IMG/VR virus record: IMGVR_UViG_3300012988_000001
Span: 1 to 64,000 of that record
Length of the DNA stretch: 64,000 bases
Direction: 5' to 3' (one strand)
The translations under genes and the position numbers were made by a program. The notes under the pieces are model-generated. The model saw only the letters and a list, made by a program, of their open reading frames with translations, did not search any database and was not told the DNA's origin. Shown here piece after piece: positions 19,152 through 49,516 of this stretch (its first letter is position 1; every line of letters begins with the position of its first letter).

Positions 19152-19682
19152 ATGTCTTTATTTCAGGAACATATGAAGTTTGCTAATGATGTATTGCGTA
19201 TACGTAATGCAATGGTTGATGAAGAACTTAATGAAAGTCTTCGCATATTTTGGGAATATCGCAGTAATTATACGATTCGTATGTTTAAAATTCATGGCAA
19301 TACTTCATCAAGACCCATGTTATTTGGTGACTGTAGCACTATGCATTACACATTAGGCGATGACCAACTTGGTTCCGTCATTACTTCTAAAAGCATTGTT
19401 TACATACATGATGATAAACCAGCGTGGCTAACATTAGAAAGCATACCCGAACAATCAGTTGATATTGTTGAATATGATGAATCAACACACTTTCAGCATA
19501 GCTTGATTTACTCTGACACACAATTAAAAGCCTTGGTAGTCGCTTCTGTACTTCGGGCAAACCCTATTATGACTAAACGTAACAACACACCATCACATTT
19601 TGGAATGCGTTTTAAAATATACTGGTATTATGTTCCCATCCTAGCAAAACTATTGAGGTATAAAGATAATGGCATCTTATGA
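19152..19682 (+). CDS. FQxS-family paralogue
   Basis: DESTHFQHSLI. Confidence 0.8.
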   Translation: MSLFQEHMKFANDVLRIRNAMVDEELNESLRIFWEYRSNYTIRMFKIHGNTSSRPMLFGDCSTMHYTLGDDQLGSVITSKSIVYIHDDKPAWLTLESIPEQSVDIVEYDESTHFQHSLIYSDTQLKALVVASVLRANPIMTKRNNTPSHFGMRFKIYWYYVPILAKLLRYKDNGIL

Positions 19683-20148
19683 AGAAGACGTAGCATACGC
19701 GAACAAGATACTTCGGGTACGAACGGCAATGATTGACGGTACTCTATTCAAAGACTCGGCGTTCCAATGTATCAATATTGGTGATGGTAATTATGAAATT
19801 ACTTTTGACCATAATGGCGGCGTAGGAATAGCTACAATTGCTTACTTAGAAAACCGACCATTCGTTGATGATGACTGTTCATATGCAGGGTATGCACGAA
19901 TCTTATTCAATAGCGAAAGCGATCTCTTTACTGTTATGGGTAGCGGTGAACAATATCGTTATATTCCAACTGCCCCAGATGAGGAATGGTACTTTCAGGC
20001 AAGTTTGGTTTCGAATGATAAGGTGCTAAGGGGAGCCACTATTATGAAAACGCTTTCGGCAACACCAATGCCGGAATTCAAACAATTCATTATTCTTCCA
20101 AATATATTGGATAAAATATTAAAACGTATGGATGATTCAGGAATATGA
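19669..20148 (+). CDS. FQxS-family paralogue
   Basis: DEEWYFQASLV. Confidence 0.8.
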   Translation: MASYEEDVAYANKILRVRTAMIDGTLFKDSAFQCINIGDGNYEITFDHNGGVGIATIAYLENRPFVDDDCSYAGYARILFNSESDLFTVMGSGEQYRYIPTAPDEEWYFQASLVSNDKVLRGATIMKTLSATPMPEFKQFIILPNILDKILKRMDDSGI

Positions 20149-20609
20149 CATTTGAAGAAGACTTAGAATACGCCCATAAGGTTTTGCGGGTTCGCACTAT
20201 TTTGGAAAATCAAACTTATCTTTCGAATTCACGCTTTCGGCACTTCTCTTTGCGACCTGATGTTTTCGAATATCATATGAAACGCGGTGTCGGTGATGAG
20301 ATTGTTATTGGTTACCATGAAAAACGACAAGATGCAAAACATATCAATTACTACTCATGGGAACTATTGATTTACAATAATAGCAAACTTAACCGGATGC
20401 AGATTCCTATGACTAATAAAGCATTCATGTATCAGACTGATGAACTATGTGAGGAATGGCATTTCCAACAAAGTCTGGTTCATGAGCCTGATGTACTAAC
20501 GGGAATGGTTATCTTCAATGTCTTGGACAGCGTTCCAACAGATTTTGATTACTTTCAACTCAAGGTTCGGAACTTAGACGATATTATTATGAGGTATGAA
20601 CTACCATGA
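20145..20609 (+). CDS. FQxS-family paralogue
   Basis: CEEWHFQQSLV. Confidence 0.8.
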   Translation: MTFEEDLEYAHKVLRVRTILENQTYLSNSRFRHFSLRPDVFEYHMKRGVGDEIVIGYHEKRQDAKHINYYSWELLIYNNSKLNRMQIPMTNKAFMYQTDELCEEWHFQQSLVHEPDVLTGMVIFNVLDSVPTDFDYFQLKVRNLDDIIMRYELP

Positions 20610-21061
20610 CATTCCAAGAGACTTTTAAATTAGGTAACGATATTGTATCCATCATGAAAGCAATGGATGATGGAAAGTTTAATGACTGTCCCAATATTCG
20701 GAGGGTTGTTAATTATGATTTAACTTTTTATTACATTGACAAAAGAAGGATTGGTGGACTTAGCCATTCAAAATATGATAACGAAACAACCATCAGGCAT
20801 CATGGTAAGATTGTCCATCACCGCCAACATGCACAACGAGTTTGTATCTTTCATGGTGGTGAAATAAAAGAATTCTTTGCAGGTGATCCTATGTTGACAC
20901 CAACAGCGGAACAATACTTTCAAAACTCATTGGTATATGAACAAGATGCACACCTACGTATATTACTATGGTATGGTCTACTTTCACAACATACATTTAA
21001 ACATAATGACGTTATGATTGATTACACTCATTTAGACACTATTCGCGAGGCATTACTATGA
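20606..21061 (+). CDS. FQxS-family paralogue
   Basis: TAEQYFQNSLV. Confidence 0.8.
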   Translation: MTFQETFKLGNDIVSIMKAMDDGKFNDCPNIRRVVNYDLTFYYIDKRRIGGLSHSKYDNETTIRHHGKIVHHRQHAQRVCIFHGGEIKEFFAGDPMLTPTAEQYFQNSLVYEQDAHLRILLWYGLLSQHTFKHNDVMIDYTHLDTIREALL

Positions 21062-21555
21062 CGTTCCAAGATGATTTAGACTTTGCTAAACGACTTGTAG
21101 ATCTCCGGGATGCATTTGTTAATGGTGAAATGGATGCATATGGTTACCTTAAGCATATCGATTATGGTGATTCTGATGTATACAAATACACACTCAAAAA
21201 CAACTATCAACCACCAATGGTTTTCAGGGTTAACAAATATGGGTTTGATGGTGTAAGCAGTTTTCAATTCAGTGATGAAGGTTATATGTTATTTCACCAT
21301 AACAAACCAACTAAAATTTGGATGCCTACTCTTGAAGATTGGATACCAGCCAGCGAGTTTGTTTGCACTGAGGAATTTCACTTCCAACAATCATTGGTGC
21401 ACAATGAATACACGGTGAGGGAAATGTTAACTATTGCATATCTGATTGAAAACCCTTTACCAGAACAATATGAATACTTTAAATTGAACATGGTATACCT
21501 CTTCGAGATGCAACAGATCCTAATCAAGCTAAGAGACAAATTAAATGCCAAATGA
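21058..21555 (+). CDS. FQxS-family paralogue
   Basis: TEEFHFQQSLV. Confidence 0.8.
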   Translation: MTFQDDLDFAKRLVDLRDAFVNGEMDAYGYLKHIDYGDSDVYKYTLKNNYQPPMVFRVNKYGFDGVSSFQFSDEGYMLFHHNKPTKIWMPTLEDWIPASEFVCTEEFHFQQSLVHNEYTVREMLTIAYLIENPLPEQYEYFKLNMVYLFEMQQILIKLRDKLNAK

Positions 21556-22153
21556 ATACATCGATAAATTAGAACGTGTTCTGTACTTTGTTTCAACATT
21601 CCACAAGCGTGGTATAGAAATGAAGAAGCATTGGAATGGGACCAAAGAACTTTACATCTGCGAGCACTTAAAGATTGAACAGCCATACTATGAACCGAAC
21701 GGTGAAGTTACTATTCTTCTGTACGCTCATGACAAAGGTAATGAGGGAATAAGCATTGACCATGTTGTAAAAACTTACCCTCACAATTACCCCCATCCAA
21801 ATAATCCAAACGAAAAACTAGCAAATACTTATTACGATACCAGTTACTATCATCAATTCTTATTCTATAACAAAGATTGTGATACTATTGAATACCAACC
21901 TGAAACTCAACATGAAGCTAAACTGGATATCCCATCGTATGATGTGAACAGTGAGGGTGGAGAATTTCAATACAGCCTATTGCACGACGATGAAATGCTT
22001 GGTATAATGCAAGTTGTTCAACATTTTAAACGCAAGGGTCATCACTCTTTTGGCGATTGGATGCACCCTGCCTTTGATAAAATCTACGAGGAACTTAATG
22101 AATACTATGACATTGGGCGAGAAGATTACTTACTTGGCGACGGAATTTCATAA
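21545..22153 (+). CDS. FQxS-family paralogue
   Basis: SEGGEFQYSLL. Confidence 0.8.
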   Translation: MPNEYIDKLERVLYFVSTFHKRGIEMKKHWNGTKELYICEHLKIEQPYYEPNGEVTILLYAHDKGNEGISIDHVVKTYPHNYPHPNNPNEKLANTYYDTSYYHQFLFYNKDCDTIEYQPETQHEAKLDIPSYDVNSEGGEFQYSLLHDDEMLGIMQVVQHFKRKGHHSFGDWMHPAFDKIYEELNEYYDIGREDYLLGDGIS

Positions 22154-22622
22154 GAATCCACAACCGTTCGTAGCAGCGTTCAAAGCAACTTGTAATTTCA
22201 CACATTCATTCCGTGACTTACAAGGAATGGATGATACAGACGATGAGTACATAGAATGTAGTACAGGAGGACAAGTACTAATCTGTACTGGAAAGTTTAA
22301 CAACAAGCTACAGAACGAACGGTGGCATTGGGCTGCTGTACAAGACGATTTACTCATGTTTTCACCTCAAAGTACTTACAACCCTCATCTTTATTATCAA
22401 GTACCCTTTGGTGGAGACAAGATACAATTTGACAACTTCCTTACTCATGATTACACAGAAGAAGAAATGTTTCAGTACTCAACAACTCTAAGCAATGGTG
22501 CTTTGGAAACGCTAGAAGCATTCGTGTATTGCAAGGAGCACTGTACTGTTCCTTTTAAGATTAACTTAGCTAAGGTGAATTTAGACTTAGCAGTAGAGGT
22601 GTATAAACGATGTCAAGCCTAG
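22098..22622 (+). CDS. FQxS-family paralogue
   Basis: TEEEMFQYSTT. Confidence 0.8.
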   Translation: MNTMTLGEKITYLATEFHKNPQPFVAAFKATCNFTHSFRDLQGMDDTDDEYIECSTGGQVLICTGKFNNKLQNERWHWAAVQDDLLMFSPQSTYNPHLYYQVPFGGDKIQFDNFLTHDYTEEEMFQYSTTLSNGALETLEAFVYCKEHCTVPFKINLAKVNLDLAVEVYKRCQA

Positions 22623-23245
22623 AACCAATAACAGCAATTACAAAAGTCGTCCCTCGCAAAAGTAAAATTAACACTATTGATACTTTTGAAGAACTTGACA
22701 AATACATTACAGTACTAACTTCAATTCTAGATTACATAGATCGATTTGTAGGTCATCCGTTCTTTACAGACTACTCACATAATGGTAGGTATAATATTGT
22801 TAAGAAGACGCACGGTGTAGATGGTTATTGTTTAACTCTAGTAAAAGATGGAATAGAATTGGCCTCAGTTGGATACTATAATTTAGACCCAGAAGATACT
22901 TCATGGACTAAGGTTGACTTATCTGGTACTACTCATATCTATGGTTTTCCACAAGAGAATCAGAGTACATATTCTTATTACGATGCATGTGATTCATTAG
23001 AAGCAGATGTGGAATATAATATTGCAGATTACAATGAAACCATGTATACTCAGTTAGAGTTTGTCTATTCTAAAGCACAAGTTAATGGTGCAATGTGTAT
23101 GGCTAAGTTAGCACAAAGTGATCCTAATCGTAAGTACAGGCAGTTTGTGATTTATGAATATCCTTCAAGGGATTTTAATGTTTTACTTGAAGACCTAAAA
23201 GATTATATATTCGAACGTACCGTCATGCTGGCTAAGGGGTTTTAA
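22610..23245 (+). CDS. FQxS-family paralogue (variant)
   Basis: YNETMYTQLEFVY at the equivalent position. Confidence 0.7.
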   Translation: MSSLEPITAITKVVPRKSKINTIDTFEELDKYITVLTSILDYIDRFVGHPFFTDYSHNGRYNIVKKTHGVDGYCLTLVKDGIELASVGYYNLDPEDTSWTKVDLSGTTHIYGFPQENQSTYSYYDACDSLEADVEYNIADYNETMYTQLEFVYSKAQVNGAMCMAKLAQSDPNRKYRQFVIYEYPSRDFNVLLEDLKDYIFERTVMLAKGF

Positions 23246-23770
23246 ATGATTTTAACTGAAGAGTTCCAAGAAGCACACGATATATTATTATTTGTCTGTT
23301 CCAAGATTCCAGTACTGGAGCAAGGTTTCAAAGATGGACTACTACAAGGTAAGACTCCAAGTATCATGTTTTATGAGTACAATATACAGTATATTAGTAC
23401 AGGAAGTGGTACTTCAGATGCAGTCCAGAGTAATATAAAATTTGCTTCATTGAACAACTATAGTTTTATCAGAAGTGAAGATCATCGTAGGTCTAATGTG
23501 AATATTCATCTTGTATATAATACGGGTCCACATTTACGCTTAGGTAAAACAGTTATTGACAACTTTGATTACAGTGAAGAGAATGTGTTTCAGCAATCTT
23601 TAGTACTTGATAACGAATCAGCATTAGATTTAGATTTCATTACGTTCCTGAAGAATAAGAAGTTCAAGCAAACATTAATGTTCAAGCGTAGGGGATATTC
23701 TCTTGATGGATTGAAGATGATTAAAGAACGAGTAGAGGAAGCACTATGTTACCTATCCGACCAGAAATAG
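23246..23770 (+). CDS. FQxS-family paralogue
   Basis: SEENVFQQSLV. Confidence 0.8.
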   Translation: MILTEEFQEAHDILLFVCSKIPVLEQGFKDGLLQGKTPSIMFYEYNIQYISTGSGTSDAVQSNIKFASLNNYSFIRSEDHRRSNVNIHLVYNTGPHLRLGKTVIDNFDYSEENVFQQSLVLDNESALDLDFITFLKNKKFKQTLMFKRRGYSLDGLKMIKERVEEALCYLSDQK

Positions 23771-24288
23771 TTGAGTACAGTGAAGAATTAAAAAAGACAA
23801 TTCAGCTAATTAAAGAAACCAATGCAATAGCACATTTAGTTCACAAAACAGGAATGTGGTCTAATAATAATGTACAGATCAGTATTGACAATTATGAAGT
23901 ATTCTGTATTAATGATTGGGAAAGTACCTTTAAATTCTTTGTAAGTAATTACGATATGATTAGTGGTACAAGTGATTATAAAGAACATAATGACGGTTCA
24001 GTAGTTAAGTACAGAGATAGTTCAAAAGAAATCAACATATGTGGTACGTTGTACACAATGGAAGAAGCCTTTAGTAATTACGAAGAGATTTATTTCCAAC
24101 ACAGTACCTTAAATCATCAATGTGCTTTAGATGCTTTTGATATGTTAATGTATTTGCACCAAGATGGTTTAGAGGGTTCATTCTTATTGACAACCCCTAT
24201 GGACATTAAAGTACTTAAGGTGTTCAACATTGATTATGATATAATGATGCAAGATTCATACGAAAGGTTTGGGAGGTACAGAACATGA
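23746..24288 (+). CDS. FQxS-family paralogue
   Basis: YEEIYFQHSTL. Confidence 0.8.
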   Translation: MLPIRPEIVEYSEELKKTIQLIKETNAIAHLVHKTGMWSNNNVQISIDNYEVFCINDWESTFKFFVSNYDMISGTSDYKEHNDGSVVKYRDSSKEINICGTLYTMEEAFSNYEEIYFQHSTLNHQCALDAFDMLMYLHQDGLEGSFLLTTPMDIKVLKVFNIDYDIMMQDSYERFGRYRT

Positions 24289-24839
24289 GTGAAGCATATG
24301 AGTACGCAAGGAAGTTCATCAAGATTAGTAAATTGATGGACGAATGTATGCACACGATGACACCAACACAACGCACCATACAAATCCTTCCTTATATTAC
24401 AATGCATGAGTTCAACGATAAGATGGACGTGTTGTATTATAACGATTATCCTGTATTAGATCATAAGATCGCATGGGGTGAGGATGCGTTCAATTACAAT
24501 TTCGTGACGAATAAGCCCATAGCTCGTGGGAGTATGGATTACAAAGATGCGATAATTGTTGACACGAGTACGAATATGTTTTATGCTAATAGGGATGATA
24601 TACAGTCGGATGGTTCAGTACCGTACAGTATGGAGTTTCTTGACGCTGAAGAACATCTATTCCAGATGGAAATAATGTTAGGTGAACGCTACGAGTTATA
24701 TAGTATATTACACGCATTGCATATGCTTGGTTACGATAACCGAGCGTATGTGCACGTACATTCATTAAACGTCTTAGATAAGATTATAGATGACGTGGAG
24801 ACATACCTTGAAAACCACCGTTACAACAAAGAATTTTAA
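24285..24839 (+). CDS. FQxS-family paralogue
   Basis: AEEHLFQMEIM. Confidence 0.8.
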   Translation: MSEAYEYARKFIKISKLMDECMHTMTPTQRTIQILPYITMHEFNDKMDVLYYNDYPVLDHKIAWGEDAFNYNFVTNKPIARGSMDYKDAIIVDTSTNMFYANRDDIQSDGSVPYSMEFLDAEEHLFQMEIMLGERYELYSILHALHMLGYDNRAYVHVHSLNVLDKIIDDVETYLENHRYNKEF

Positions 24840-25371
24840 CATCCAAGAAGTTCATGCATATGCGATAAAGATGAAGGAGTTGGTAGATTATATGTTTGCC
24901 AACATCTATTCGTGTAGGAATTTCGGTTCCTTCCATTTTAATAAAAAGATGGGTTCGGTGCAGTTCAAGAACAACGACCCAGAACGAGAGAATCAAATTT
25001 TTTCAGTACAAAGAGTATCACAAGGAGTATGGAATGGTAAACATAGTAAGGTAGCCCACAAACCATTTCCTTTCAAATTAGAGTATTTTGAGAATGGTAC
25101 AGACCTGTGTATAGAAGTATCTACAATCAAGGGTAAAGAAGAACAGCATTGGGGATTAGATTACCACAAATATTATTCGAAAGAACAATTAGAAGATGAA
25201 GGTTTTTTATTCCAGCAATCATTGGTAATGGAAGAAGAAGCCTTATTTGGTATATGCTGTGCTTCGTGGTTATATCATATGAAGATGCAGTTCACATATA
25301 TCATTTGTGAATTAGATGTAGATGAAATGAACCGAGTACATAAGGTGGTGTTCGATGATGACCGACCGTGA
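24790..25371 (+). CDS. FQxS-family paralogue
   Basis: DEGFLFQQSLV; start uncertain. Confidence 0.78.
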   Translation: MTWRHTLKTTVTTKNFNIQEVHAYAIKMKELVDYMFANIYSCRNFGSFHFNKKMGSVQFKNNDPERENQIFSVQRVSQGVWNGKHSKVAHKPFPFKLEYFENGTDLCIEVSTIKGKEEQHWGLDYHKYYSKEQLEDEGFLFQQSLVMEEEALFGICCASWLYHMKMQFTYIICELDVDEMNRVHKVVFDDDRP

Positions 25372-25999
25372 AGTAATTCAAGCTGCTGATTATGTAGAGG
25401 AAGCGGTATTCCTTTTAGTAGAGATGGAAGAAATGATGGGACAGAAGATGAAGATATATGTTCCAGCAGACGGATTAATATTACACAATGAAGAACCAGT
25501 TAATCAAGCACATGTATTAATCAATTACAGCAATAACATGTATGAGGTATTTGATAATTGTGAGTGCAGTGTGAATTTAGGAATGTTCACATGGTTGAAG
25601 TATAAAATAGATGGCAAAGCAGAGAAGACCGCTAATACGATGCTACGTTCAGAATCAAATAAGTACAGTATAATTTTGAGTACAAATGCTGGTAGTAATG
25701 ATATAGTAAAATTAGTCCGAGCTAGTATGAATGTAAAATACGAAATGCATAAAATTGGCACACCTGAATGTGATGAGTATTTGTTTTTACGTTCATTAGA
25801 AGAAGAAGATTTCGAAATGAATGTTTTATTGTTTATGTACGAATGGCGTAGGCGTTATGGTCGTAATATAGTATTGCGAATTGGACGTGACCCAGTACAG
25901 ACATGTTCATTAATATTACAAACAGTTAAGGATGCATATGAAAAGTACATTGAATATAGCAGGAATCCAGAGAACGATACGAGCTTTAGAACAATATAA
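25355..25999 (+). CDS. FQxS-family paralogue (variant)
   Basis: CDEYLFLRSLE. Confidence 0.72.
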   Translation: MMTDREVIQAADYVEEAVFLLVEMEEMMGQKMKIYVPADGLILHNEEPVNQAHVLINYSNNMYEVFDNCECSVNLGMFTWLKYKIDGKAEKTANTMLRSESNKYSIILSTNAGSNDIVKLVRASMNVKYEMHKIGTPECDEYLFLRSLEEEDFEMNVLLFMYEWRRRYGRNIVLRIGRDPVQTCSLILQTVKDAYEKYIEYSRNPENDTSFRTI

Positions 26000-26618
26000 T
26001 TCAGCGAACAATGCTAGGATTGAAGTTGGTTATTTCATTGTAGATGGTAAATCATATGGAATTCGGTTGCGTAAGAATTATTACGATACCAATTACGGCG
26101 ATGAGCGTTATACGATTTTAGTAGAGATTCAGTACCCAAGTACAAGTGGATTAGTGTGGGTGAGCTTAGGTGAATTCAGTGCAGTACATCCAGATTCATT
26201 TACATCATATACCCCAAAGATTCGTATTGATCGGAATTGGATTACCTACAAAGCGGCTCCAGAGCAAGATCAATGCAGTGCTGAAGTGACAGTTACCCCA
26301 ATTAAGAGTGTTGTTACGAAGCGGCTCTTTCATGTTTCCGGGGAAGAGATACACGAGATTGCTGATGATTTTGAGAGTCAGCAGTTTCAGCACAATTTAG
26401 TATGTGATGATGATGAATTAATGGATGAAGAGTACAATGCACAGTGCATGGAATTGGTGCTTAGTGAGTTCCAATTAATGTACGAAGGTAAAGCTGAAAT
26501 CACATGTATTGACATTATGCCGACACACATTATTGGTGCTGATGTTAATTTCGCAATTCCTTATGATAGTATTGCAACGGAGATTGAAAATTATGTCCAA
26601 GTCCACAAAAGTAAGTAA
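25938..26618 (+). CDS. FQxS-family paralogue
   Basis: FESQQFQHNLV. Confidence 0.78.
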   Translation: MKSTLNIAGIQRTIRALEQYNSANNARIEVGYFIVDGKSYGIRLRKNYYDTNYGDERYTILVEIQYPSTSGLVWVSLGEFSAVHPDSFTSYTPKIRIDRNWITYKAAPEQDQCSAEVTVTPIKSVVTKRLFHVSGEEIHEIADDFESQQFQHNLVCDDDELMDEEYNAQCMELVLSEFQLMYEGKAEITCIDIMPTHIIGADVNFAIPYDSIATEIENYVQVHKSK

Positions 26619-27225
26619 AGAAGCCAAGAAGTTTAGTGAAGCATATGAGATTGGTAAGGTATGGTTACCGAGGATAGTGAATGGTTTGTATATGATTCGT
26701 GATATGCGTTGTAGGAATGATAGTATTGAAGCGAGTGAAGTATTCCATATGTTTGACGAATTGAATTATTTCATTTCATATAGGGATGAGCTTCCTGAGT
26801 GTGAGAATATTTCATTAGGTAAAGGTAATAGTATGTACCTTAGTCTAAATCGTGGTATGCCAATTATTCCAACCAAACCATTGTGCGTTCATAGTATTGT
26901 TAAAGAGTTTCATGGTGATAAGAATTACGTCCAGTACGTTAATCGTAATACACCAGTATTTGGCGTAGTGAAGTATGATAATTTTCCAGTACAGTTACCG
27001 GAAGGTTTAGACATTATGGAATTACCGGAAGAGTCAATGTTTCAGACCGAAATGTGTATTGATTCGAAATTAGTTAATGGTGCTGCGGTGTGGATGGGTT
27101 TGCGTGATTTTGGATACAAGTTTGGTGAGATAATTTATTACGGAGATAGTTTGTTGAAGATTTATCGCCTTAATGATGCTGTAGAAACCGTTGTCAAGAA
27201 ATTACGTGAAAAATACGAAGCATAA
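26593..27225 (+). CDS. FQxS-family paralogue
   Basis: PEESMFQTEMC. Confidence 0.78.
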   Translation: MSKSTKVSKEAKKFSEAYEIGKVWLPRIVNGLYMIRDMRCRNDSIEASEVFHMFDELNYFISYRDELPECENISLGKGNSMYLSLNRGMPIIPTKPLCVHSIVKEFHGDKNYVQYVNRNTPVFGVVKYDNFPVQLPEGLDIMELPEESMFQTEMCIDSKLVNGAAVWMGLRDFGYKFGEIIYYGDSLLKIYRLNDAVETVVKKLREKYEA

Positions 27226-27383: not shown

Positions 27384-28004
27384 ATGAATTTATTTGATTT
27401 GCCCGAAAAAGAATTATTTGATATTAAAGAAGTAGGTTTAGTTATTCGTGATATAGCATTGTCTCGCATTCCTGATCGTATGTTGTCAGCCAGTGATCAA
27501 GTCATTTATAGTACAGAAGATTTCGAAGTACTGTTAATTAGTAATAGTGTAGTACTAAAGAAACACATTCAAGATGGAAGTCATAATAAATGGAAGACGC
27601 GATTCTGTTTCGCTGCTAACTATGATGATATGATAGATGAAAGACCTTGGAGTACTCGCTATAATGTAGACCGTGACCGATATGTTATTCGTTATACTTG
27701 GGCTAATAGTATCATTAAAGTAAATGACCGTAACGTTTTCTTCAGTTCTGTACAAGGAAACGAAGAGTACATTGATGTTATTGAAGAACATATTCACTAT
27801 AGTGATATGGAACCTGAGATATTTCAACGTGCACTTATTGAATCCCCAATGCAGATGAATGTCATTATGTTGAATTATCTATTCCGAAGGGATCTTCCAT
27901 ATCATCAAGCAGAACCTGAAATCACTTTACATGGCTATTTAACTGAGTTAGAATTGTTGTCTAAGGTTGTTCCACATATTGCGGAGTTACGTAAATTATG
28001 CTAA
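27384..28004 (+). CDS. FQxS-family paralogue
   Basis: MEPEIFQRALI. Confidence 0.78.
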   Translation: MNLFDLPEKELFDIKEVGLVIRDIALSRIPDRMLSASDQVIYSTEDFEVLLISNSVVLKKHIQDGSHNKWKTRFCFAANYDDMIDERPWSTRYNVDRDRYVIRYTWANSIIKVNDRNVFFSSVQGNEEYIDVIEEHIHYSDMEPEIFQRALIESPMQMNVIMLNYLFRRDLPYHQAEPEITLHGYLTELELLSKVVPHIAELRKLC

Positions 28005-28576
28005 CAATGGAAAAAGTTACTGCAATATATCGTCTATTGGATGTTCTATTGTATATGTACAAAGAGAAGGTTGGTGCAGTAAGGACAAGTGCTTTCAGTA
28101 CTAACATGTCTGCAATGAATAATACTTACATTATAGAGTCAGACACCAAACTTGCGTGGAGTGTTATTCTACGGGATAGTGAAGATGATTGGTTCATTGC
28201 ATCTATTCATCCAGATTCGGAACCGGGTTGTAGGCGTAGGTGGAATGCGTATACTAATAAAACACAGACTAACCAAATGTCATGTACCTTCTGTACAAAT
28301 GCTCCTAGTGCTTTGAATCATGGAGAGAAAGATGTAGTAATTCAAACACTTCCTAGTACAGTTGTTGATGAAGGTGATATCTTCAGTCTACAAACGTTGT
28401 ATGAAGATTGTTATGTACTGTGTCTAGTAATTGAGGCGTATTTACGTAATAAGATTGAAGAAGAGTTTTATATACCTTTGAACATTGATAAGTTAATGAA
28501 GATGGAAGTATATCACATTGAAGCTGTTACTCAATTCTGGGAAGAGTATATTGACGCACATGAGGAAATGCAATGA
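27998..28576 (+). CDS. FQxS-family paralogue (variant)
   Basis: DEGDIFSLQTLY. Confidence 0.72.
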   Translation: MLTMEKVTAIYRLLDVLLYMYKEKVGAVRTSAFSTNMSAMNNTYIIESDTKLAWSVILRDSEDDWFIASIHPDSEPGCRRRWNAYTNKTQTNQMSCTFCTNAPSALNHGEKDVVIQTLPSTVVDEGDIFSLQTLYEDCYVLCLVIEAYLRNKIEEEFYIPLNIDKLMKMEVYHIEAVTQFWEEYIDAHEEMQ

Positions 28577-29142
28577 TTAGTTATATGCAGTGCATCGACC
28601 ATGCTATTATGGTTAAGGAAGCAATGTCATTTATGACACTCAACGGTGATAAGTACAGAGCAAATACGGCTAAGATGGGCGATACAGAGATTGACTATAC
28701 TTCTTCTCAGATTATAATTTTTCATGAAGGTTTGCAGATTGGTCATATTGAAACATTGATTAACTTGAGGTTACGTTTATCCATACCTAAGCACTTATCA
28801 TTTGCTACATTCTACACACAGACACCAGAGAATGGGATTGGTGAAGTTAATAAGCGTCCCGCAAACTTACAGACTGATACTTCCGAAGTGATTGATTTAT
28901 TACCGCAAACTTCAGAAGAAGAGTGGGATGCAGTTGCTTTCCAGTTAGAAACGATGTATGATAACAAAATTGCTTCATCATTGATGCTAGAACCTTTCTG
29001 TACTCAGGAATTGACCACATGGTATCCAACTAGGCATTTCCGGTACAAACAGTACACAATCAGTGATTCATGGGTTGATTTACCGTTTGAATTAATTGCA
29101 CAAAACATATTCGAGATGAACACTCGATTTAACAAAGAATAA
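28573..29142 (+). CDS. FQxS-family paralogue
   Basis: WDAVAFQLETMY. Confidence 0.75.
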   Translation: MISYMQCIDHAIMVKEAMSFMTLNGDKYRANTAKMGDTEIDYTSSQIIIFHEGLQIGHIETLINLRLRLSIPKHLSFATFYTQTPENGIGEVNKRPANLQTDTSEVIDLLPQTSEEEWDAVAFQLETMYDNKIASSLMLEPFCTQELTTWYPTRHFRYKQYTISDSWVDLPFELIAQNIFEMNTRFNKE

Positions 29143-29144
29143 AC

Positions 29145-29183
29145 TTGACAGGGACGGTGTACTGATGTATACTGTCCCTTTCT
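29145..29183 (+). promoter_or_regulatory. Promoter overlapping a terminator-like hairpin
   Basis: TTGACA N17 TATACT; AGGGACGGT/ACTGTCCCT inverted repeat spans the -10. Confidence 0.75.
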
Positions 29184-29198
29184 TATATGGGGGTTATT

Positions 29199-29798
29199 AT
29201 GTCCAAGATGGTTAAGTTATATAATGAAATCTTCAAGTTGATGATTCTCATTGATTCAAAATGGGATGAAATTCTTGCTCGCAAAGAAGATGTAATTGAG
29301 GTTGGTTCCTATGTAATTAGCAAAGAGAAAGCTAAGTGGGATGACCATCACGAGTACTGGAGGGTTTCTATCGACAAACCTAATATATACTCGAACAAGT
29401 ACACTAACATCGTATGTTTTTATGAACGTGGTCAACGTAGTGCTATTGGTGGTATCCCGTACAATGTCAGTAAATTTGACGCTTTAGTTGTGTCAAAGTA
29501 CACAGACAGTGTTATGTTTTATAAAGAAGATCGTTGGGGTAAAGACGAAGAGTACACTTGTACTATCCCCTATGACCGTTCTGCTTCGGCTGAGGAACGT
29601 AAATTCAGTGTAGATTTGGCATTTGAGAGTCCCGGTGAACGCGAACTGTTGAATCGCATGATTGACTTCCAGAATATGGATTTGAAACACATCGATTTAT
29701 TTTCATATGCATTCGATTTATTTGTTGTCCTCACTGATGGATACGTGTATAATGATCTCATCAGCCGTCCTTTCTTTAAAATAGGAGCACCAAAATGA
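29199..29798 (+). CDS. FQxS-family paralogue (variant)
   Basis: AEERKFSVDLAF. Confidence 0.7.
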   Translation: MSKMVKLYNEIFKLMILIDSKWDEILARKEDVIEVGSYVISKEKAKWDDHHEYWRVSIDKPNIYSNKYTNIVCFYERGQRSAIGGIPYNVSKFDALVVSKYTDSVMFYKEDRWGKDEEYTCTIPYDRSASAEERKFSVDLAFESPGERELLNRMIDFQNMDLKHIDLFSYAFDLFVVLTDGYVYNDLISRPFFKIGAPK

Positions 29799-42017: not shown

Positions 42018-42028
42018 AAGGAAACTAT

Positions 42029-45208: not shown

Positions 45209-45847
45209 ATGAATAGCATTGAAGCATCAGAAATCAATGTCCCTAGTATTCTGAATTCTATTGAATTTATGATCAAGATGAGTACTAAAGGTATCTTCTT
45301 GGACGCTCTTGGGTTTCGCGTTTATGGTGATAGTTCCTATCAGAAACTAGAAACTGAATCACATCCATATGAAAGTGGACGCCCATCAATTAAAACTGAA
45401 TATTTATACTGTGCTCAACCAACTATCCGAACATTTTTTGGTGGTAGTAGACCAGCACTTATGTACTGTTCCACCCGTTTTGTGGGTGATATTCGTGGTC
45501 TACGTTCTAACCTAATCTCATACGATTACCGAGATAAAGAATGGGCGATCAAGGTTGAACAACCAAACCAACATTTCACAGTAACCCACAAGATTGAACC
45601 CGGTAATGTACCAACTGATCAAATTCAGGATATCAATGATGAAGCTGAAATGTTCCAGTACTCATTGACAAATCCATCAGTACCTGATATTGTATTTCAA
45701 GCTGCTCGTCGGATGATGGAGCTAATTCAGATCAGTCCACAAGTTGATGCAATTACTATGCGTATGGATAGTGTAGTTGTAGATTTGGAGTACTTGGATC
45801 TAGAAGAAGAATTTAACAGGAAGCAACAAGGCTTCCAGAACTTTTAA
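45209..45847 (+). CDS. FQxS-family paralogue
   Basis: DEAEMFQYSLT. Confidence 0.8.
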   Translation: MNSIEASEINVPSILNSIEFMIKMSTKGIFLDALGFRVYGDSSYQKLETESHPYESGRPSIKTEYLYCAQPTIRTFFGGSRPALMYCSTRFVGDIRGLRSNLISYDYRDKEWAIKVEQPNQHFTVTHKIEPGNVPTDQIQDINDEAEMFQYSLTNPSVPDIVFQAARRMMELIQISPQVDAITMRMDSVVVDLEYLDLEEEFNRKQQGFQNF

Positions 45848-46618: not shown

Positions 46619-46666
46619 TTTTATTATGTACACGCTTCGGCGTGTACTTCTTTCTGGAGAATACAA

Positions 46667-47242
46667 ATGTTAGAGAACTACAAGAAGTTAATTGAATTCA
46701 TGCAAGTACTAGAAGGTTTTGAGAATTATCGTATGAGCAATGGGTATGGTGCACGTTTGAAACCATTCGCTTATATTAAATTATTCGGTAGTATTACATA
46801 TGATAATGGGAAATTGTCTATCAGGAACGAAAAAGGAATTGAGTATAAATTCAATAATTTTTTACACACAGATCGTAATCGTACATCAATTGCAAGTAAT
46901 AAATTGAGGGTTGGATCTAAAACCGGGCTACCAGTACCGTACTTTAATATTCAGTACAGTGATGATTTCTTACAACTAACTTCCCCGGAACTCTTTAAGT
47001 TTAACTTGGAATTACAAGATTTATTTGATGAAGAAGCACATTTCCAGCACTCTATGCTTGAGGATATTCCTAGTATTGAAGTACTGAAGGAAGCACAAGA
47101 AATCTTTGAAATGTTATTGAATGAAGACATTGGTTATAATGGACCAATGGAACTACCGGAAATAGATTATGATGGATTCTTACGTTGGATGCGGGATCAA
47201 ACAATTTACGTATCAGGATATTGGGAGCTTTTAGATGTATAG
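46667..47242 (+). CDS. FQxS-family paralogue
   Basis: DEEAHFQHSMLEDIP. Confidence 0.8.
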   Translation: MLENYKKLIEFMQVLEGFENYRMSNGYGARLKPFAYIKLFGSITYDNGKLSIRNEKGIEYKFNNFLHTDRNRTSIASNKLRVGSKTGLPVPYFNIQYSDDFLQLTSPELFKFNLELQDLFDEEAHFQHSMLEDIPSIEVLKEAQEIFEMLLNEDIGYNGPMELPEIDYDGFLRWMRDQTIYVSGYWELLDV

Positions 47243-47762
47243 TACAGCTATTAGGCAGATGATTGAATTTATCTTGCACTTACAACGTTCTAACGTTCAC
47301 ATCAAAACAGTACATCGCCGCATTGAATTTGTAGCAATGAATCACCAGTACATTTGGGACGGATCAGAATTAAAGATAACAACAAATACAAGTACTGTAA
47401 AAATAAAACTTGGATTGGTAAATTCTGAAAACCCAAACTATATTAGCATTAACACCAAACGTTTGAATATTAAATTCGCTCATAAGAATTTCTTAACATT
47501 CCTTTGTCCAGATATGACTGTTCCAACACATGAAATGATGGTTGATGAAGGTACATATCAGCAACATATGGTCTTCACTGATTTGCCAGATTACGATGAA
47601 GTACTAGAAATATATAAAGTGGCTCACGAATTAGTGGAAAATGATTTACGTTACTTTGGTTCTTATAAGATTCCAGTACTGGACATGGGTCATATTGCTC
47701 GCCAGATGGAATGGAAGTACCCAGAAACAAAAGGTTATTGGGGGAGGTATCTAAATGAATAA
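47235..47762 (+). CDS. FQxS-family paralogue (variant)
   Basis: DEGTYQQHMVFTDLP. Confidence 0.78.
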   Translation: MYSTAIRQMIEFILHLQRSNVHIKTVHRRIEFVAMNHQYIWDGSELKITTNTSTVKIKLGLVNSENPNYISINTKRLNIKFAHKNFLTFLCPDMTVPTHEMMVDEGTYQQHMVFTDLPDYDEVLEIYKVAHELVENDLRYFGSYKIPVLDMGHIARQMEWKYPETKGYWGRYLNE

Positions 47763-48336
47763 AGTACTAGAATTAAAACGTCATATTCGTAATATCCTTG
47801 CTGCTTTAAGTGCTGGTGAGTACAGGAAGGGTACAATTCGTTGTGAATATAAAGTGCCTGATACTGAGATTGTCCATAAACATCTCATAACTTATTTCCA
47901 TCGTGGTCAAGATATTTGCTACGATTATAATTATATGTCGTATGGACTTGATGAATCCCGTACTGTGCACTTGGACATTGATACAACTGTTGATGATGCT
48001 CGTGAGGAAGATTCCTTTATCATTATCACAGAGAAAAAACAATTGGCATACAAGTTCGTTCCTTCTACAATGGATCATATTAAGGTTTTGATTCGGTTCG
48101 ATGGTGGAGTTACAGAACGAATTCCTCTAAAAGATATCTTGACAGAAGAACAGTTCTTCATGTATAGTACTCTCTATGACCTTCCTGAATTTGATGAAGT
48201 TAAAGAGTTGGCAGTCATGGGACAACAACTTCGTGGTGAGATGATGCGTAAGCGTATCAAAATTCAGGGGATGTTTGCACAAGAAATAGTTGATATGGAA
48301 AGTGAAGCATTTTTATACGAGGCGAAATACGGATGA
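47755..48336 (+). CDS. FQxS-family paralogue (variant)
   Basis: TEEQFFMYSTLYDLP. Confidence 0.78.
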   Translation: MNKVLELKRHIRNILAALSAGEYRKGTIRCEYKVPDTEIVHKHLITYFHRGQDICYDYNYMSYGLDESRTVHLDIDTTVDDAREEDSFIIITEKKQLAYKFVPSTMDHIKVLIRFDGGVTERIPLKDILTEEQFFMYSTLYDLPEFDEVKELAVMGQQLRGEMMRKRIKIQGMFAQEIVDMESEAFLYEAKYG

Positions 48337-48872
48337 ATCTATATGAAGTGTATTTAAGTCTATCAGCATTGTATGCTAATAGTCTTTTAGACAACAGTCC
48401 ATTCTTCAATAAACAGGTTGGTGATCTATGGATATCCGTAACTCATAAGCAAGCATCTGTACTTAGTCTTTCTGACCGGACGTGTATAATGATGCTGATG
48501 GACGTTTCTGGTTATCATGGTGTTTACACAGAGAATAAGATTATGTTCAGTGAACAACACGGCAACCCTAGTTCTTCGGTTGAAATTGGTAACAGCCTAA
48601 CTGATTATTTTGAGTTTATCACTGAACTACCTATGTACAGACCACCGGGAACGAATTTGGAAAGCCCACGATGGCACATTGACGATATCTCAGAAGAGTT
48701 TATCTTTCAGCAGAGTACCATGTATAATCTATTAGAGTACAAGTACTTTGAACAAATCAAACATTATTATCATGATATAAGCCGTCTAAATCGTGCAGCT
48801 AAAACTTCCTGCATGATGCATTTAGATTACGATTGGCATAATATTCCATTAACGGAGAACGACTTCCTATGA
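48333..48872 (+). CDS. FQxS-family paralogue
   Basis: SEEFIFQQSTMYNLL. Confidence 0.8.
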   Translation: MNLYEVYLSLSALYANSLLDNSPFFNKQVGDLWISVTHKQASVLSLSDRTCIMMLMDVSGYHGVYTENKIMFSEQHGNPSSSVEIGNSLTDYFEFITELPMYRPPGTNLESPRWHIDDISEEFIFQQSTMYNLLEYKYFEQIKHYYHDISRLNRAAKTSCMMHLDYDWHNIPLTENDFL

Positions 48873-49516
48873 AGAACATTCAACCTGTGTTGTTTTTCTT
48901 TGAAACAATTAATCAGTGGAACTATCATACTTATGTTGACTTATTCGACATGAAACCGTCTGTACGTTATAAAGATATGTTTCATGAAGTACTAGGAGGA
49001 TTTTCACATCCTTTAAGTAAGTATGAAATGTACATTACTACCACTAAACAAAATCAGGGTATTGGATTTATGATGGAAGACCGTCATACAAATCAACCAG
49101 TACTATTCGCTGGTTTACAAGAGTGGGGTGGTACAGCAGTTATGTGGCCTGATTGGATGTATATTCCAATGAATGCTAACAAACTTGTATTTGATGATCG
49201 CGATCCAAACACACCAGAAATGGAAGTAGTAATTATGAGTGAGGAAGAACATTTCCAAACTATGATGCTACGTGACTTACCTGATCATCATGTAATTGAA
49301 CCAGCGATAGAAGTCTACCAGTACTTAAAGCCTATTGCAGCTAATCACAAGATTGGTTTCTCAATAGATTATAATCACATGGATATGGACTTTAAAGATT
49401 TTATTCCAGCAGAAAGTGCTTTTCAAACCATTGAACAATTGTTTGGTAATGCACTTGAGCTATACTATGAGGCAGAAGAACATGGAAACCCATTCAGTTA
49501 TTACACTTTATCATGA
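48869..49516 (+). CDS. FQxS-family paralogue
   Basis: SEEEHFQTMMLRDLP. Confidence 0.8.
   Translation: MKNIQPVLFFFETINQWNYHTYVDLFDMKPSVRYKDMFHEVLGGFSHPLSKYEMYITTTKQNQGIGFMMEDRHTNQPVLFAGLQEWGGTAVMWPDWMYIPMNANKLVFDDRDPNTPEMEVVIMSEEEHFQTMMLRDLPDHHVIEPAIEVYQYLKPIAANHKIGFSIDYNHMDMDFKDFIPAESAFQTIEQLFGNALELYYEAEEHGNPFSYYTLS

What the first reader, a model, noticed from the sequence alone, without database searches (positions are those of the whole stretch)
19152..49516. 36-member paralogue family with variable N-termini and a shared C-terminal [DE]ExxFQxS[LT] motif
Seen: 25 consecutive genes (19152-33286), 5 more (33663-36199) and 6 more (45209-49516) encode 150-230 aa proteins that look unrelated over most of their length. 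All carry an acidic-x-aromatic-FQ-x-S/T-hydrophobic motif roughly 35-80 aa from the C-terminus, followed by a hydrophobic helix. 28 have a literal FQ and 8 are variants. Neighbours form subfamilies: M.F.ED...RVR at 19.1-21.5 kb, .ED.YFQ..LV.P at 33.6-34.8 kb, and FQ..L.D[LI]P at 46.6-49.5 kb. This pattern fits serial tandem duplication. Many are translationally coupled (ATGA) behind a few sigma70 promoters. Inference: a constant docking module fused to a diversified recognition domain, i.e. an adaptor arsenal (conceptually like poxvirus F-box/BTB adaptors). Candidate roles are recruiting many host or defence proteins to one phage partner, or a shared sorting signal. I know of no named family for this motif.
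Basis: partly seen in the sequence, partly recalled or inferred. Interest (0 to 1): 0.87.

Follow-up and report, generated by a model that had tools for sequence, protein, structure and literature searches.

The report
Early paralogue array with one shared helix
A Rak2-like jumbo phage spends about 20 kb on 36 fast-evolving, early-expressed small proteins of one unknown fold that keep a single short helix (EExxFQxS) in common. They may be a host-takeover or anti-defence arsenal, but their function is untested.

Summary
Thirty-six + strand genes (25 + 5 + 6, at the stated coordinates) carry [DE][DE]x-hydrophobic-F-Q-x-S-[LT]-hydrophobic, 33-87 aa from the C-terminus; 28 have a literal FQ and 8 are variants. 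The motif is far above chance, and an HMM built here recovers the syntenic arrays of other phages with no decoy hits.

The window is a Rak2-like jumbo myophage. The family occurs across that clade (fENko-Kae01, RaK2, coliphage A4, Xanthomonas XbC2 and XaC1, metagenome relatives). It has no Pfam, NCBIfam or PADLOC match and no sequence match in the PDB. The member 24 model has no Foldseek match in the PDB.

AlphaFold models of two distant members are confident, single compact domains with the same order of elements: N-terminal helix, antiparallel sheet, motif helix, two further helices. The proteins are therefore not a docking module fused to unrelated domains.

Consensus sigma70 promoters head the blocks and T4-type late motifs are absent, so expression is probably early. 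In RaK2 no virion protein detected by mass spectrometry maps to the array.

Orthologues are syntenic but diverge faster than neighbouring genes. The motif has genome-specific forms: FQxS, FNxS in XaC1, FQx[LM]T in XbC2. This hints at a shared co-evolving partner.

Function is inferred, not shown. A one-sentence 2017 note recorded such an array in phage 121Q.

The parts
19096..19124 (+). sigma70-type promoter heading block 1
   Evidence: TTGACA, 17 nt, TATACT in the gap before member 1
19152..19682 (+). family member 1 (176 aa)
   Evidence: F at aa 114; leave-one-out motif score 13.7; BLAST-linked to members 2, 3 and 5
19669..20148 (+). family member 2 (159 aa)
   Evidence: F at aa 109; score 13.9; orthologue ENKO_052
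20145..20609 (+). family member 3 (154 aa)
   Evidence: F at aa 107; best motif score, 20.9; no orthologue in fENko-Kae01, so a lineage-specific duplicate
20606..21061 (+). family member 4 (151 aa)
   Evidence: F at aa 105; score 8.3; ATGA overlap on both sides
21058..21555 (+). family member 5 (165 aa)
   Evidence: F at aa 109; score 18.8; in the BLAST cluster with member 1
21545..22153 (+). family member 6 (202 aa)
   Evidence: F at aa 141; score 15.3; orthologues in L001 and L002
22107..22622 (+). family member 7 (171 aa; longest ORF starts at 22014)
   Evidence: F at aa 122; score 15.2; start moved to the ATG with a Shine-Dalgarno site
22610..23245 (+). probable member 8 (211 aa), variant TQ
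   Evidence: motif not significant on its own; placed by MAFFT column, size and position
23246..23770 (+). family member 9 (174 aa)
   Evidence: F at aa 115; score 13.4; motif kept in 4 orthologues
23746..24288 (+). family member 10 (180 aa)
   Evidence: F at aa 117; score 7.7
24285..24839 (+). family member 11 (184 aa)
   Evidence: F at aa 126; FQ then M-E in all orthologues; score 1.8
24790..25371 (+). family member 12 (193 aa)
   Evidence: F at aa 141; score 11.5
25355..25999 (+). family member 13 (214 aa), variant FL
   Evidence: the fENko-Kae01 orthologue has the canonical FQ, so Q was lost in this lineage
25938..26618 (+). family member 14 (226 aa; longest ORF starts at 25932)
   Evidence: F at aa 150; FQ then x-N-L in all orthologues
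26593..27225 (+). family member 15 (210 aa; longest ORF starts at 26509)
   Evidence: F at aa 150; start chosen at the ATG with a Shine-Dalgarno site
27384..28004 (+). family member 16 (206 aa; longest ORF starts at 27360)
   Evidence: F at aa 147; follows the only long gap inside block 1 (134 nt)
27998..28576 (+). family member 17 (192 aa), variant FS
   Evidence: orthologues in L001-L004 have FQ
28573..29142 (+). family member 18 (189 aa)
   Evidence: F at aa 123; score 4.4
29145..29173 (+). sigma70-type promoter inside block 1
   Evidence: TTGACA, 17 nt, TATACT in the 44-nt gap before member 19
29187..29798 (+). probable member 19 (203 aa), variant FS
   Evidence: the variant is kept in all 5 orthologues; motif not significant alone
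29795..30436 (+). family member 20 (213 aa)
   Evidence: F at aa 141; score 5.0
30429..30977 (+). family member 21 (182 aa)
   Evidence: F at aa 125; score 8.7
30974..31486 (+). family member 22 (170 aa), variant FT
   Evidence: the variant is kept in orthologues; a consensus promoter lies in its 3' end
31401..31429 (+). sigma70-type promoter inside the coding 3' end of member 22
   Evidence: exact TTGACA, 17 nt, TATACT, 58 nt before the start of member 23
31487..32083 (+). family member 23 (198 aa)
   Evidence: F at aa 134; score 6.9
32080..32754 (+). family member 24 (224 aa; longest ORF starts at 32059)
   Evidence: AlphaFold pLDDT 92.8, pTM 0.90; motif lies in helix 141-149; no PDB fold match
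32705..33286 (+). family member 25 (193 aa; longest ORF starts at 32633)
   Evidence: F at aa 139; score 13.8
33287..33694 (+). embedded non-member gene (135 aa), context only
   Evidence: no motif; 73-90% identical to its relatives, more conserved than the family; phrog_11632
33663..34277 (+). family member 26 (204 aa)
   Evidence: F at aa 143; score 5.2
34264..34848 (+). family member 27 (194 aa)
   Evidence: F at aa 128; score 9.9; relatives L003 and L004 have an extra member after it
34845..35297 (+). family member 28 (150 aa), variant FT
   Evidence: best-conserved member; orthologues in A4, RaK2 and XbC2 at E 1e-25 to 1e-34
35269..35736 (+). family member 29 (155 aa)
   Evidence: F at aa 123, only 33 aa from the C-terminus
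35720..36199 (+). family member 30 (159 aa)
   Evidence: AlphaFold pLDDT 86.2, pTM 0.81; motif lies in helix 97-107; RaK2 orthologue at TM 0.79
36250..36723 (+). conserved 157-aa gene marking the end of the main array, context only
   Evidence: not a member; found at this position in 72 phage records
45147..45175 (+). sigma70-type promoter heading block 3
   Evidence: TTGACA, 17 nt, TATAAT before member 31
45209..45847 (+). family member 31 (212 aa)
   Evidence: F at aa 149; score 11.6
46667..47242 (+). family member 32 (191 aa)
   Evidence: score 12.9; carries the [LIM]P signature of the RNA-ligase-proximal subfamily
47235..47762 (+). family member 33 (175 aa), variant YQ
   Evidence: motif weak alone, but BLAST-linked to members 32 and 36
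47755..48336 (+). family member 34 (193 aa), variant FM
   Evidence: score 7.1; carries the subfamily signature
48333..48872 (+). family member 35 (179 aa)
   Evidence: score 14.8; hits in A4 and XbC2
48869..49516 (+). family member 36 (215 aa)
   Evidence: score 12.5; 53% identical to ENKO_101; directly upstream of the RNA ligase gene

Best explanation
The array is a multigene family specific to Rak2-like jumbo phages. Its products are acidic proteins of 150-226 aa, each a single domain.

Shown or directly read from sequence:
- The genes sit in three blocks just after the part of the genome that is the terminal repeat in a relative.
- Each block is headed by a consensus host sigma70 promoter, and the genes are packed as overlapping, coupled operons. 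Expression is therefore probably immediate-early and run by the host polymerase.
- The motif is under protein-level purifying selection.
- Close relatives keep most paralogues as one-to-one syntenic orthologues. These orthologues diverge about twice as fast as neighbouring genes.

Predicted:
- Two distant members fold into the same compact arrangement: an N-terminal helix, an antiparallel beta sheet, the short motif helix, and two more helices.

Inferred:
- The motif helix is a contact site that all paralogues use for one common partner. The partner is most likely phage-encoded, or the family members themselves.
- The fast-evolving remainder, mainly the sheet, gives each paralogue its own host or defence target.
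- On this reading the array is an early host-takeover or anti-defence arsenal.
For: Family and motif. Protein-level selection on the motif.

Clade and synteny.

Faster divergence than neighbours: 34% against 62% identity to fENko-Kae01. Gain and loss among close relatives.

One compact fold in two members. Foldseek hits from the member 24 model run full length to uncharacterised 170-215-aa proteins of Rak2-like phages, which I take to be paralogues. Probability is up to 0.98 and TM-score 0.35-0.46.

Early signals: 10 exact consensus promoters, all on the + strand, against 0.14 expected. The T4-type late motif occurs once against 7.3 expected.

Not a virion component in RaK2.

Shared-partner inference:
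- The conserved positions include polar residues (acidic pair, Q, S) as well as F.
- In XaC1 position +1 is N in 17 of the 21 array proteins where the motif was located; two more read by eye are also N. No N appears among 155 members from the other phages.
- XbC2 has FQx[LM]T.
- The RNA-ligase-proximal subfamily signature is shared by the window, fENko-Kae01, A4 and XaC1: 11 of 18 proximal members against 4 of 159 main-array members. The Q or N state therefore follows the genome, not the paralogue lineage.
Against: - No partner, target or phenotype is known.
- There are no transcript or protein data for this phage.
- Only two members were modelled, and no coordinates were available, so I could not check whether the motif residues are exposed.
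- Cross-paralogue Foldseek TM-scores are low (0.35-0.46). The member 30 model did not hit the member 24 group.
- The genome-specific motif forms could instead reflect turnover, with re-expansion from a few founders in XaC1 and XbC2. One-to-one orthology is not traceable at that distance.
- XbC2 and XaC1 share a host species yet differ in motif. That argues against a host partner but does not prove a phage partner.
- Members 8 and 19 lack a significant motif.
Confidence: 0.4

Rival explanations
1. The motif is only the structural keystone of the fold, for example a helix cap plus a buried Phe. The paralogues act independently as stand-alone binders or inhibitors of different host or defence proteins, with no common partner.
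For: The motif is a helix inside a compact, confidently predicted domain. The rest of the sequence has diverged beyond recognition, as expected if only the fold core is constrained. Early promoters and fast evolution fit an arsenal of independent effectors equally well.
Against: Half of the conserved positions are polar. If Q and N were structurally equivalent, mixtures would be expected within a genome. Instead each genome has nearly one state, across two old subfamilies.
Confidence: 0.3
2. The paralogues assemble with one another through the conserved helix into a mixed oligomer or larger early structure. The helix must then stay mutually compatible within a genome.
For: This explains concerted, genome-specific motif forms without a separate partner. 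Co-transcription in coupled operons gives co-expression.
Against: There is no evidence of oligomerisation and no multimer prediction was available. Copy number varies from about 10 in XbC2 to more than 30, and members are gained and lost between close relatives. That is unusual for a defined assembly.
Confidence: 0.12
3. They are proteins packaged in the head and injected with the DNA, and the motif is a sorting or protease-processing signal. This would resemble T4 internal proteins or phiKZ inner-body proteins.
For: Phage 121Q gives a bubblegram pattern consistent with an inner body (PMC5646251). The orthologue of member 30 was detected by LC-MS/MS in a fENko-Kae01 preparation.
Against: The RaK2 virions were CsCl-purified. 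All 54 detected proteins map to two structural clusters, while the RaK2 array (ORF397-439) is annotated hypothetical throughout. The fENko-Kae01 sample was an ultrafiltered lysate that also held DNA ligase, polymerases and kinases. The motif is internal and helical, not a terminal peptide. The promoters are early type and no late motif is present.
Confidence: 0.05
4. They are small enzymes and the acidic pair, Q and S form a catalytic or ligand-binding site.
For: The conserved residues are polar.
Against: Q is replaced by N, A or S throughout XaC1, and S by L or M throughout XbC2. There is no match to any enzyme family or fold. Thirty-odd paralogous enzymes with unalignable bodies would be unusual.
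Confidence: 0.05
5. The array is selectively neutral filler made by tandem duplication after capsid enlargement.
For: Hua et al. 2017 raised tandem duplication as a route to genome growth.
Against: All 36 ORFs are intact. The motif shows purifying selection with mixed codons. Close relatives keep most paralogues (members 6-30) as one-to-one syntenic orthologues, and the array itself is present across genera.
Confidence: 0.03

Closest known systems
[quoted passage not shown] 2017, mBio, PMC5646251)
   Same: Same phage clade. Coliphage A4, of the same genus Asteriusvirus, has at least 29 members with the same motif at the syntenic locus. 121Q carries the conserved marker gene that ends the array.
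   Different: The paper gives one sentence, calls the genes 'very similar' and uses them only as an example of genome growth. No motif, fold, timing or function is given. Here most paralogues are not detectably similar outside 12 residues. I did not read the 121Q array itself.
T-even internal proteins (IPI, IPII, IPIII, Alt) that share a capsid-targeting sequence (from my own knowledge)
   Same: A set of diverse, fast-evolving phage proteins that share one short conserved sequence. At least one of them counters a host defence.
   Different: That signal is an N-terminal peptide of about 10 aa, cut off by the prohead protease, and the proteins are in the virion. Here the motif is an internal helix, the promoters are early type, and the RaK2 virion proteome does not include the array.
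Multigene families of large eukaryotic DNA viruses: poxvirus ankyrin/PRANC and BTB-kelch adaptors, African swine fever virus MGF360/505 (from my own knowledge)
   Same: Tens of diverged tandem paralogues near a genome end next to the terminal repeat, with gain and loss between strains. For the poxvirus adaptors, a constant contact element is combined with a variable binding surface.
   Different: There is no sequence or fold relation. The poxvirus adaptors are two-domain proteins that dock to host cullin ligases, which bacteria lack. Here the protein is one compact domain.
Zinc-ribbon expansion of about 35 copies in Bacillus phage G (PMC7824862)
   Same: A lineage-specific expansion of one small domain in a jumbo phage, function unknown.
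   Different: That is a recognisable zinc ribbon and a different fold. Nothing in this family has cysteine or histidine ligand patterns.
phiKZ-type inner-body paralogue families (from my own knowledge)
   Same: Paralogous families in a jumbo phage. 121Q may have an inner body.
   Different: Those are abundant virion proteins processed by the head protease. See the virion evidence above.
PHROGs clusters phrog_12674, phrog_9317, phrog_15293, phrog_32531 and phrog_38478
   Same: Nine member-to-cluster matches among the 36 members at E <= 0.001.
   Different: All are labelled 'unknown function' and each covers only one orthologue group or subfamily. No existing profile unites the family.

Membership tests
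Any Pfam, NCBIfam or PADLOC family | A significant profile match | tested here: not met
   No family at E <= 0.01 for any of the 36 members in Pfam or NCBIfam. PADLOC gave one chance-level DndG hit.
Any solved structure | Sequence-profile or fold similarity to a PDB chain | tested here: not met
   Profiles A1, A3 and A4 give nothing below E 0.08. Foldseek with the member 24 model gives a best E of 0.76 and TM-score below 0.2.
T4-type internal proteins with a capsid-targeting sequence | The shared signal is at the extreme N-terminus and is removed at a protease site | tested here: not met
   The motif lies at residues 101-150, inside a predicted helix of a compact domain.
T4-type internal proteins with a capsid-targeting sequence | The proteins are present in purified virions | tested here: not met
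   From the literature and the record annotation for RaK2 only. The 54 virion proteins map to two structural clusters, and array ORF397-439 is annotated hypothetical. This was not tested for the window phage.
Poxvirus-type F-box/PRANC or BTB adaptors | A PRANC/F-box or BTB domain plus ankyrin or kelch repeats | tested here: not met
   No such Pfam domains. The models show one domain without repeats.
Poxvirus-type adaptors, as a way of working only | All paralogues bind one common hub through the conserved element | not testable with these tools
   There is only indirect support from genome-specific motif forms. It needs interaction data.
121Q-type tandem array of Rak2-like phages | More than 20 tandem same-strand genes of 110-230 aa between the terminal-repeat region and the RNA ligase / polynucleotide kinase genes, ending at the conserved 157-aa gene | tested here: met
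   The same layout occurs in fENko-Kae01, RaK2, A4 and XaC1, with a shorter array in XbC2. The marker gene is in 72 phage records, including 121Q.
121Q-type tandem array of Rak2-like phages | The members carry the acidic-F-Q/N-x-S/L-[LT] helix motif | tested here: met
   Window 36; fENko-Kae01 at least 24; A4 at least 29; RaK2 at least 25; XaC1 about 21 with N at +1; XbC2 about 7 with L or M at +3.
Early (host-polymerase) gene class | Consensus sigma70 promoters upstream and no late promoters | tested here: met
   This is sequence evidence only; no transcript data exist.

The most novel reading that the evidence does not exclude
The family is a hub-and-spoke adaptor set. Every paralogue uses the conserved helix to dock to one phage-encoded effector, for example a protease or a modifying enzyme. 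Each uses its own variable surface to bring a different host or defence protein to that effector. This would be a bacterial-virus counterpart of the poxvirus substrate-adaptor families. The hub and the helix would co-evolve, which would explain the FQxS, FNxS and FQxLT forms.
Probability: 0.15. Interest if true: 0.9.

Novelty: categorically new. Interest (0 to 1): 0.72.

Why it matters
The family has no annotation. It has no sequence relative among solved structures, and the one model searched has no fold relative. It has not been studied beyond one sentence in 2017.

The genes look immediate-early, evolve faster than their neighbours, and are gained and lost between close relatives. That is the usual signature of genes at the phage-host interface. 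These phages lack the protective nucleus of phiKZ-like jumbo phages, so a large set of early binders is a plausible way to meet many defence systems.

The work here gives a short defining motif, two confident structure models, orthologue sets and natural motif variants. Together these make the question directly testable. If a common partner exists, it would be a new organising principle for phage counter-defence.

Tried and rejected
- A nucleotide search of the array against GenBank phages found no match. A tblastn search with member 3 found none either.
- All-against-all BLAST of window ORFs links only two small subfamilies.
- Leave-one-out HMMs on the parts before and after the motif gave only a weak excess: 7 of 36 and 3 of 36 above the 99th percentile of decoys.
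- hhalign of orthologue-group profiles without the motif did no better than reversed decoys. With the motif as anchor, the flanks add about 1.7 score units.
- A Gibbs motif search found only a faint N-terminal-helix pattern and nothing convincing in the sheet or the C-terminal helices.
- A profile search of 1.84 billion representatives with the member 24 orthologue group returned only 11 orthologue clusters. It found no paralogues and nothing outside the clade.
- Word-index searches with members 24, 28 and 30 returned only unnamed orthologues.
- A Chou-Fasman segment test supports a helical C-terminal part (33 of 36), but it is too crude for the N-terminal helix.
- I considered the motif as a protease site of the 3C or TEV type, which cleave after Q. 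I rejected it because the residue after Q is unconstrained, Q is N in XaC1, and the motif is helical in a packed domain.
- I considered a DNA- or RNA-level element. I rejected it because the codons are mixed.
- A phmmer search of XaC1 array proteins against window members found no hits at E < 0.01, so deep orthology cannot be settled.
- dN/dS was not computed, because synonymous sites are saturated at the available distances.
- Literature searches found no description of the family other than the 121Q sentence.

Full report
1. What is there.

The region is a run of same-strand, tightly packed genes. I translated all + strand ORFs and aligned the 36 candidates. MAFFT places one column with Phe in 34 of 36, flanked by an acidic pair before it and Q, x, S, [LT], [LVM] after it.

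With corrected starts, the Phe lies 33-87 residues from the C-terminus.

The pattern FQ.[ST][LTMIV] occurs in 19 of 39 ORFs in the region. Outside it occurs in 1 of 91, and in shuffles 0.5 times on average.

In a leave-one-out test of a 17-residue motif HMM, 23 of 36 members beat every one of 2072 negatives and 29 of 36 beat the 99th percentile. The weak ones are members 8, 13, 16, 19, 22, 29 and 33:
- Members 13 and 16 have orthologues with a canonical motif.
- Member 33 is BLAST-linked to members 32 and 36.
- Member 22 keeps its own variant form in all orthologues read, and member 29 keeps FQ in all of them.
- Members 8 and 19 remain only probable.

Codons at the motif are fully mixed: Phe TTT 17 and TTC 17, Gln CAG 19 and CAA 11, Ser from both codon boxes. 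The constraint is therefore on the protein.

Outside the motif the paralogues are nearly unalignable. BLAST joins only members 1, 2, 3 and 5 and members 32, 33 and 36. Profiles of the flanks do not exceed decoys. The proteins are acidic, with mean pI 5.3.

2. Whose genome.

RNA ligase 1, polynucleotide kinase-phosphatase and an ATP-dependent DNA ligase lie downstream. The ligase is 77% identical to those of Klebsiella phage fENko-Kae01 and Salmonella phages Munch, 7t3 and PHA46, and 66-71% identical to those of coliphages of the 121Q group. The window is therefore a Rak2-like jumbo myophage. It is not itself in the GenBank phage set at nucleotide level. Its contig is 366,160 bp.

In fENko-Kae01 the syntenic array, ENKO_051 onward, begins 86 bp after the end of the 19.7-kb direct terminal repeat. 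Here an HNH homing endonuclease gene (18572-19099) sits just before the array.

3. Distribution and evolution.

An HMM of the 36 window proteins recovers the fENko-Kae01 array and no other ORF or decoy. The same motif fills the syntenic arrays of:
- three metagenome relatives;
- coliphage A4 of the genus Asteriusvirus, with at least 29 members, some only 112 aa;
- RaK2, ORF397-439, with at least 25 members.

A conserved 157-aa gene (36250-36723) marks the end of the main array in 72 phage records, from Escherichia to Xanthomonas hosts.

A logo from 155 members reads [ED][EGD]x[LYHIF]-F-Q-x-S-[LT]-[VLIM]-[YH]-[DNP]. The members from loci other than the window were picked with the motif HMM, so the logo is partly circular.

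Between the window and its relatives, most of members 6-30 have one-to-one syntenic orthologues aligned over their full length. Each orthologue group keeps its own version of the motif. Most of the array is therefore old.

Family orthologues diverge faster than neighbouring genes: 34% against 62% identity to fENko-Kae01, and 62-71% against 76-83% to closer relatives. The closest relative differs from gene to gene, which suggests exchange between lineages.

There is some turnover. Members 1-5 are five genes here and two in fENko-Kae01. Two relatives have one extra member after member 27. At the distance of A4, RaK2 and XbC2, only members 28, 29, 30, 35 and 36 keep traceable orthologues.

The profile of the member 24 group finds only 11 clusters among 1.84 billion representatives, all of them orthologues.

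4. Fold.

I aligned member 24 with 20 orthologues (34-98% identity) and member 30 with 15 orthologues (45-99% identity), and ran AlphaFold on each. Both models are confident and compact: pLDDT 92.8 with pTM 0.90, and pLDDT 86.2 with pTM 0.81.

Both models have the same order of elements:
- an N-terminal helix (residues 4-27 in member 24; 2-15 in member 30);
- an antiparallel sheet;
- a short helix that is the motif (141-149; 97-107);
- a long helix;
- a C-terminal helix.

Member 24 has extra helices before the motif and one extra strand after it.

The motif is therefore an integral helix of a one-domain protein, not a separate module. The parts before it share a topology even though their sequences do not align. 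A Gibbs search finds a faint common pattern in the N-terminal helix (10.4 bits against 9.5 +/- 0.2 in shuffles).

Foldseek finds nothing in the PDB for member 24; the best E-value is 0.76. In the viral library it finds the orthologue at TM-score 0.87. It then finds full-length matches of modest quality: probability 0.4-0.98 and TM-score 0.35-0.46. These are to 170-215-aa proteins with neighbouring accession numbers, and to proteins of Yersinia, Cronobacter, Serratia and Erwinia Rak2-like phages. I read these as paralogues, but I could not fetch their sequences.

Member 30 finds its RaK2 orthologue at TM-score 0.79 and GAP32 proteins at probability up to 0.97. It does not find the member 24 group. 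Sequence profiles find no solved structure.

5. Expression signals.

The exact pattern TTGACA, 16-18 nt, TATA[AC]T occurs 10 times in the window, always on the + strand, against 0.14 expected. Four copies serve the family: at 19096, 29145, 31401 and 45147. The T4-type late motif TATAAATA occurs once, on the other strand, against 7.3 expected.

Junctions are mostly overlaps, ten of them ATGA. The CBB paper likewise assigns RpoD-like promoters and early function to these genome-end regions (PMC5259590).

6. Virion or not.

ENKO_077, the orthologue of member 30, is flagged as seen by LC-MS/MS. That sample was an ultrafiltered lysate in which DNA ligase, polymerases and kinases were also seen (PMC11218385). 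The detection therefore shows expression only.

For CsCl-purified RaK2, all 54 virion proteins map to two structural clusters (PMC3622015). The RaK2 array is annotated as hypothetical proteins throughout. A packaged-protein role is therefore unlikely, although 121Q may have an inner body (PMC5646251).

7. Genome-specific forms of the motif.

In Xanthomonas phage XaC1 the syntenic arrays carry D-[DE]-x-F-N-x-S-[LT]. Position +1 is N in 17 of the 21 proteins where a regular expression located the motif; Q occurs once, A twice and S once. Two further proteins read by eye also have N. A scorer that ignores positions +1 to +3 gives N in 9 of 14 XaC1 proteins. The same scorer gives Q in 22-32 of 25-34 proteins in each of the window, fENko-Kae01, A4 and RaK2. 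No N occurs at +1 among the 155 members of the other phages.

Xanthomonas phage XbC2 infects the same host species. It has F-Q-x-[LM]-T in 7 of about 10 members, read by eye.

The small subfamily next to the RNA ligase gene carries an extra signature, [LIM]-P at +8/+9. This is seen in 11 of 18 such genes in the window, fENko-Kae01, A4 and XaC1, against 4 of 159 main-array genes. That subfamily is therefore older than the split of these phages. Yet in XaC1 both it and the main array have N, while elsewhere both have Q. The state follows the genome, not the paralogue lineage.

Two explanations remain. One is co-evolution of all paralogues with one shared partner, which could be the paralogues themselves. 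The other is re-expansion from a few founders plus coincidence.

These replacements also argue against Q and S being catalytic.

8. Most likely working.

Read from sequence or predicted: the family, its old age, its fast divergence, the common fold of two members, early-type promoters, and absence from the RaK2 virion proteome.

Inferred:
- The proteins are made first after infection.
- The conserved helix is a common contact site.
- The variable surface gives each paralogue its own target among host or defence proteins.

I put 0.4 on this reading. I put 0.3 on the reading in which the helix is only a fold keystone and the paralogues act independently. The remainder is split between co-assembly, packaged proteins, enzymes and neutral filler.

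9. Comparison with what is known.

No profile library holds the family. PHROGs holds five fragments of it, all of unknown function.

[quoted passage not shown] RaK2 and CBB papers note paralogues only in general terms.

By way of working, the nearest analogies are multigene families at the genome ends of large eukaryotic DNA viruses, and T-even internal proteins with a shared targeting peptide. These analogies rest on my own knowledge. The defining features of each are not met here; see the membership table.

10. Verdict.

The existence of the array in related genomes is on record, but as a protein family it is undescribed. It has no sequence relative among solved structures, no fold match for the one model searched, and unknown function. 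I therefore rate it categorically new as a kind, with the caveat that nothing functional has been shown.

Noticed in passing
L008 14192-19115 (Vibrio phage 2.275.O._10N.286.54.E11, MG592671.1, genes NVP2275O_157-173): This lies at the position syntenic with the FQ array, just upstream of the homologue of the 157-aa marker gene. The distant jumbo phage carries a different tandem family there. It has about 14 basic proteins of 100-130 aa with variable N-parts, an internal [IL]L.G[DN][FWY] motif and an identical C-terminal tail ending PNQRRRGIG. No FQ motif is present.
   Followed up: partly
window 1-19000: The left third of the window is a run of small genes, each separated by an intergenic spacer of about 80 nt. 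Five of the ten exact consensus sigma70 promoters lie here (4933, 7009, 11003, 15056, 16096). The 29-nt promoters at 7009 and 11003 are identical, and ORFs 2504-2767 and 11064-11303 are paralogues. In fENko-Kae01 the corresponding region is the 19.7-kb direct terminal repeat.
   Followed up: no
window 18572-19099: An HNH plus NUMOD4 homing endonuclease gene sits directly before the array. Its stop codon overlaps the first array promoter.
   Followed up: no
window 33287-33694 and 36250-36723: Two non-member genes are tied to the array. One is embedded in it (135 aa, phrog_11632) and one ends it (157 aa, phrog_16362). Both are much better conserved than the family (73-96% identity to relatives) and keep their positions in A4, RaK2 and XbC2. 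They are candidates for a shared partner, but nothing tests this.
   Followed up: partly
window 42014-43076, 44234-44935, 49416-52293, 58334-59077, 61600-63030: Downstream enzymes: Dam-type methyltransferase, cytidylyltransferase-like protein, HD-domain protein, RNA ligase 1, polynucleotide kinase-phosphatase (the last two form a T4-type tRNA repair pair), a metallophosphatase and an ATP-dependent DNA ligase.
   Followed up: no
L003 12767-13327 and L004 12771-13331: Two metagenome relatives carry one extra family member (186 aa, canonical motif) between the orthologues of members 27 and 28. It is absent from the window and from L002. This is gene gain or loss among close relatives.
   Followed up: yes
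window 27225-27384: This is the only long non-coding gap inside block 1. It holds a long imperfect inverted repeat (GGGGCC ... GGCCCC) around an A-rich stretch. It may be a terminator or a processing site and was not analysed.
   Followed up: no
L006 10672-12084 (coliphage A4 gene A4_379): A 470-aa gene annotated as a methyl-accepting chemotaxis protein interrupts the family array of coliphage A4. There is no counterpart in the window.
   Followed up: no
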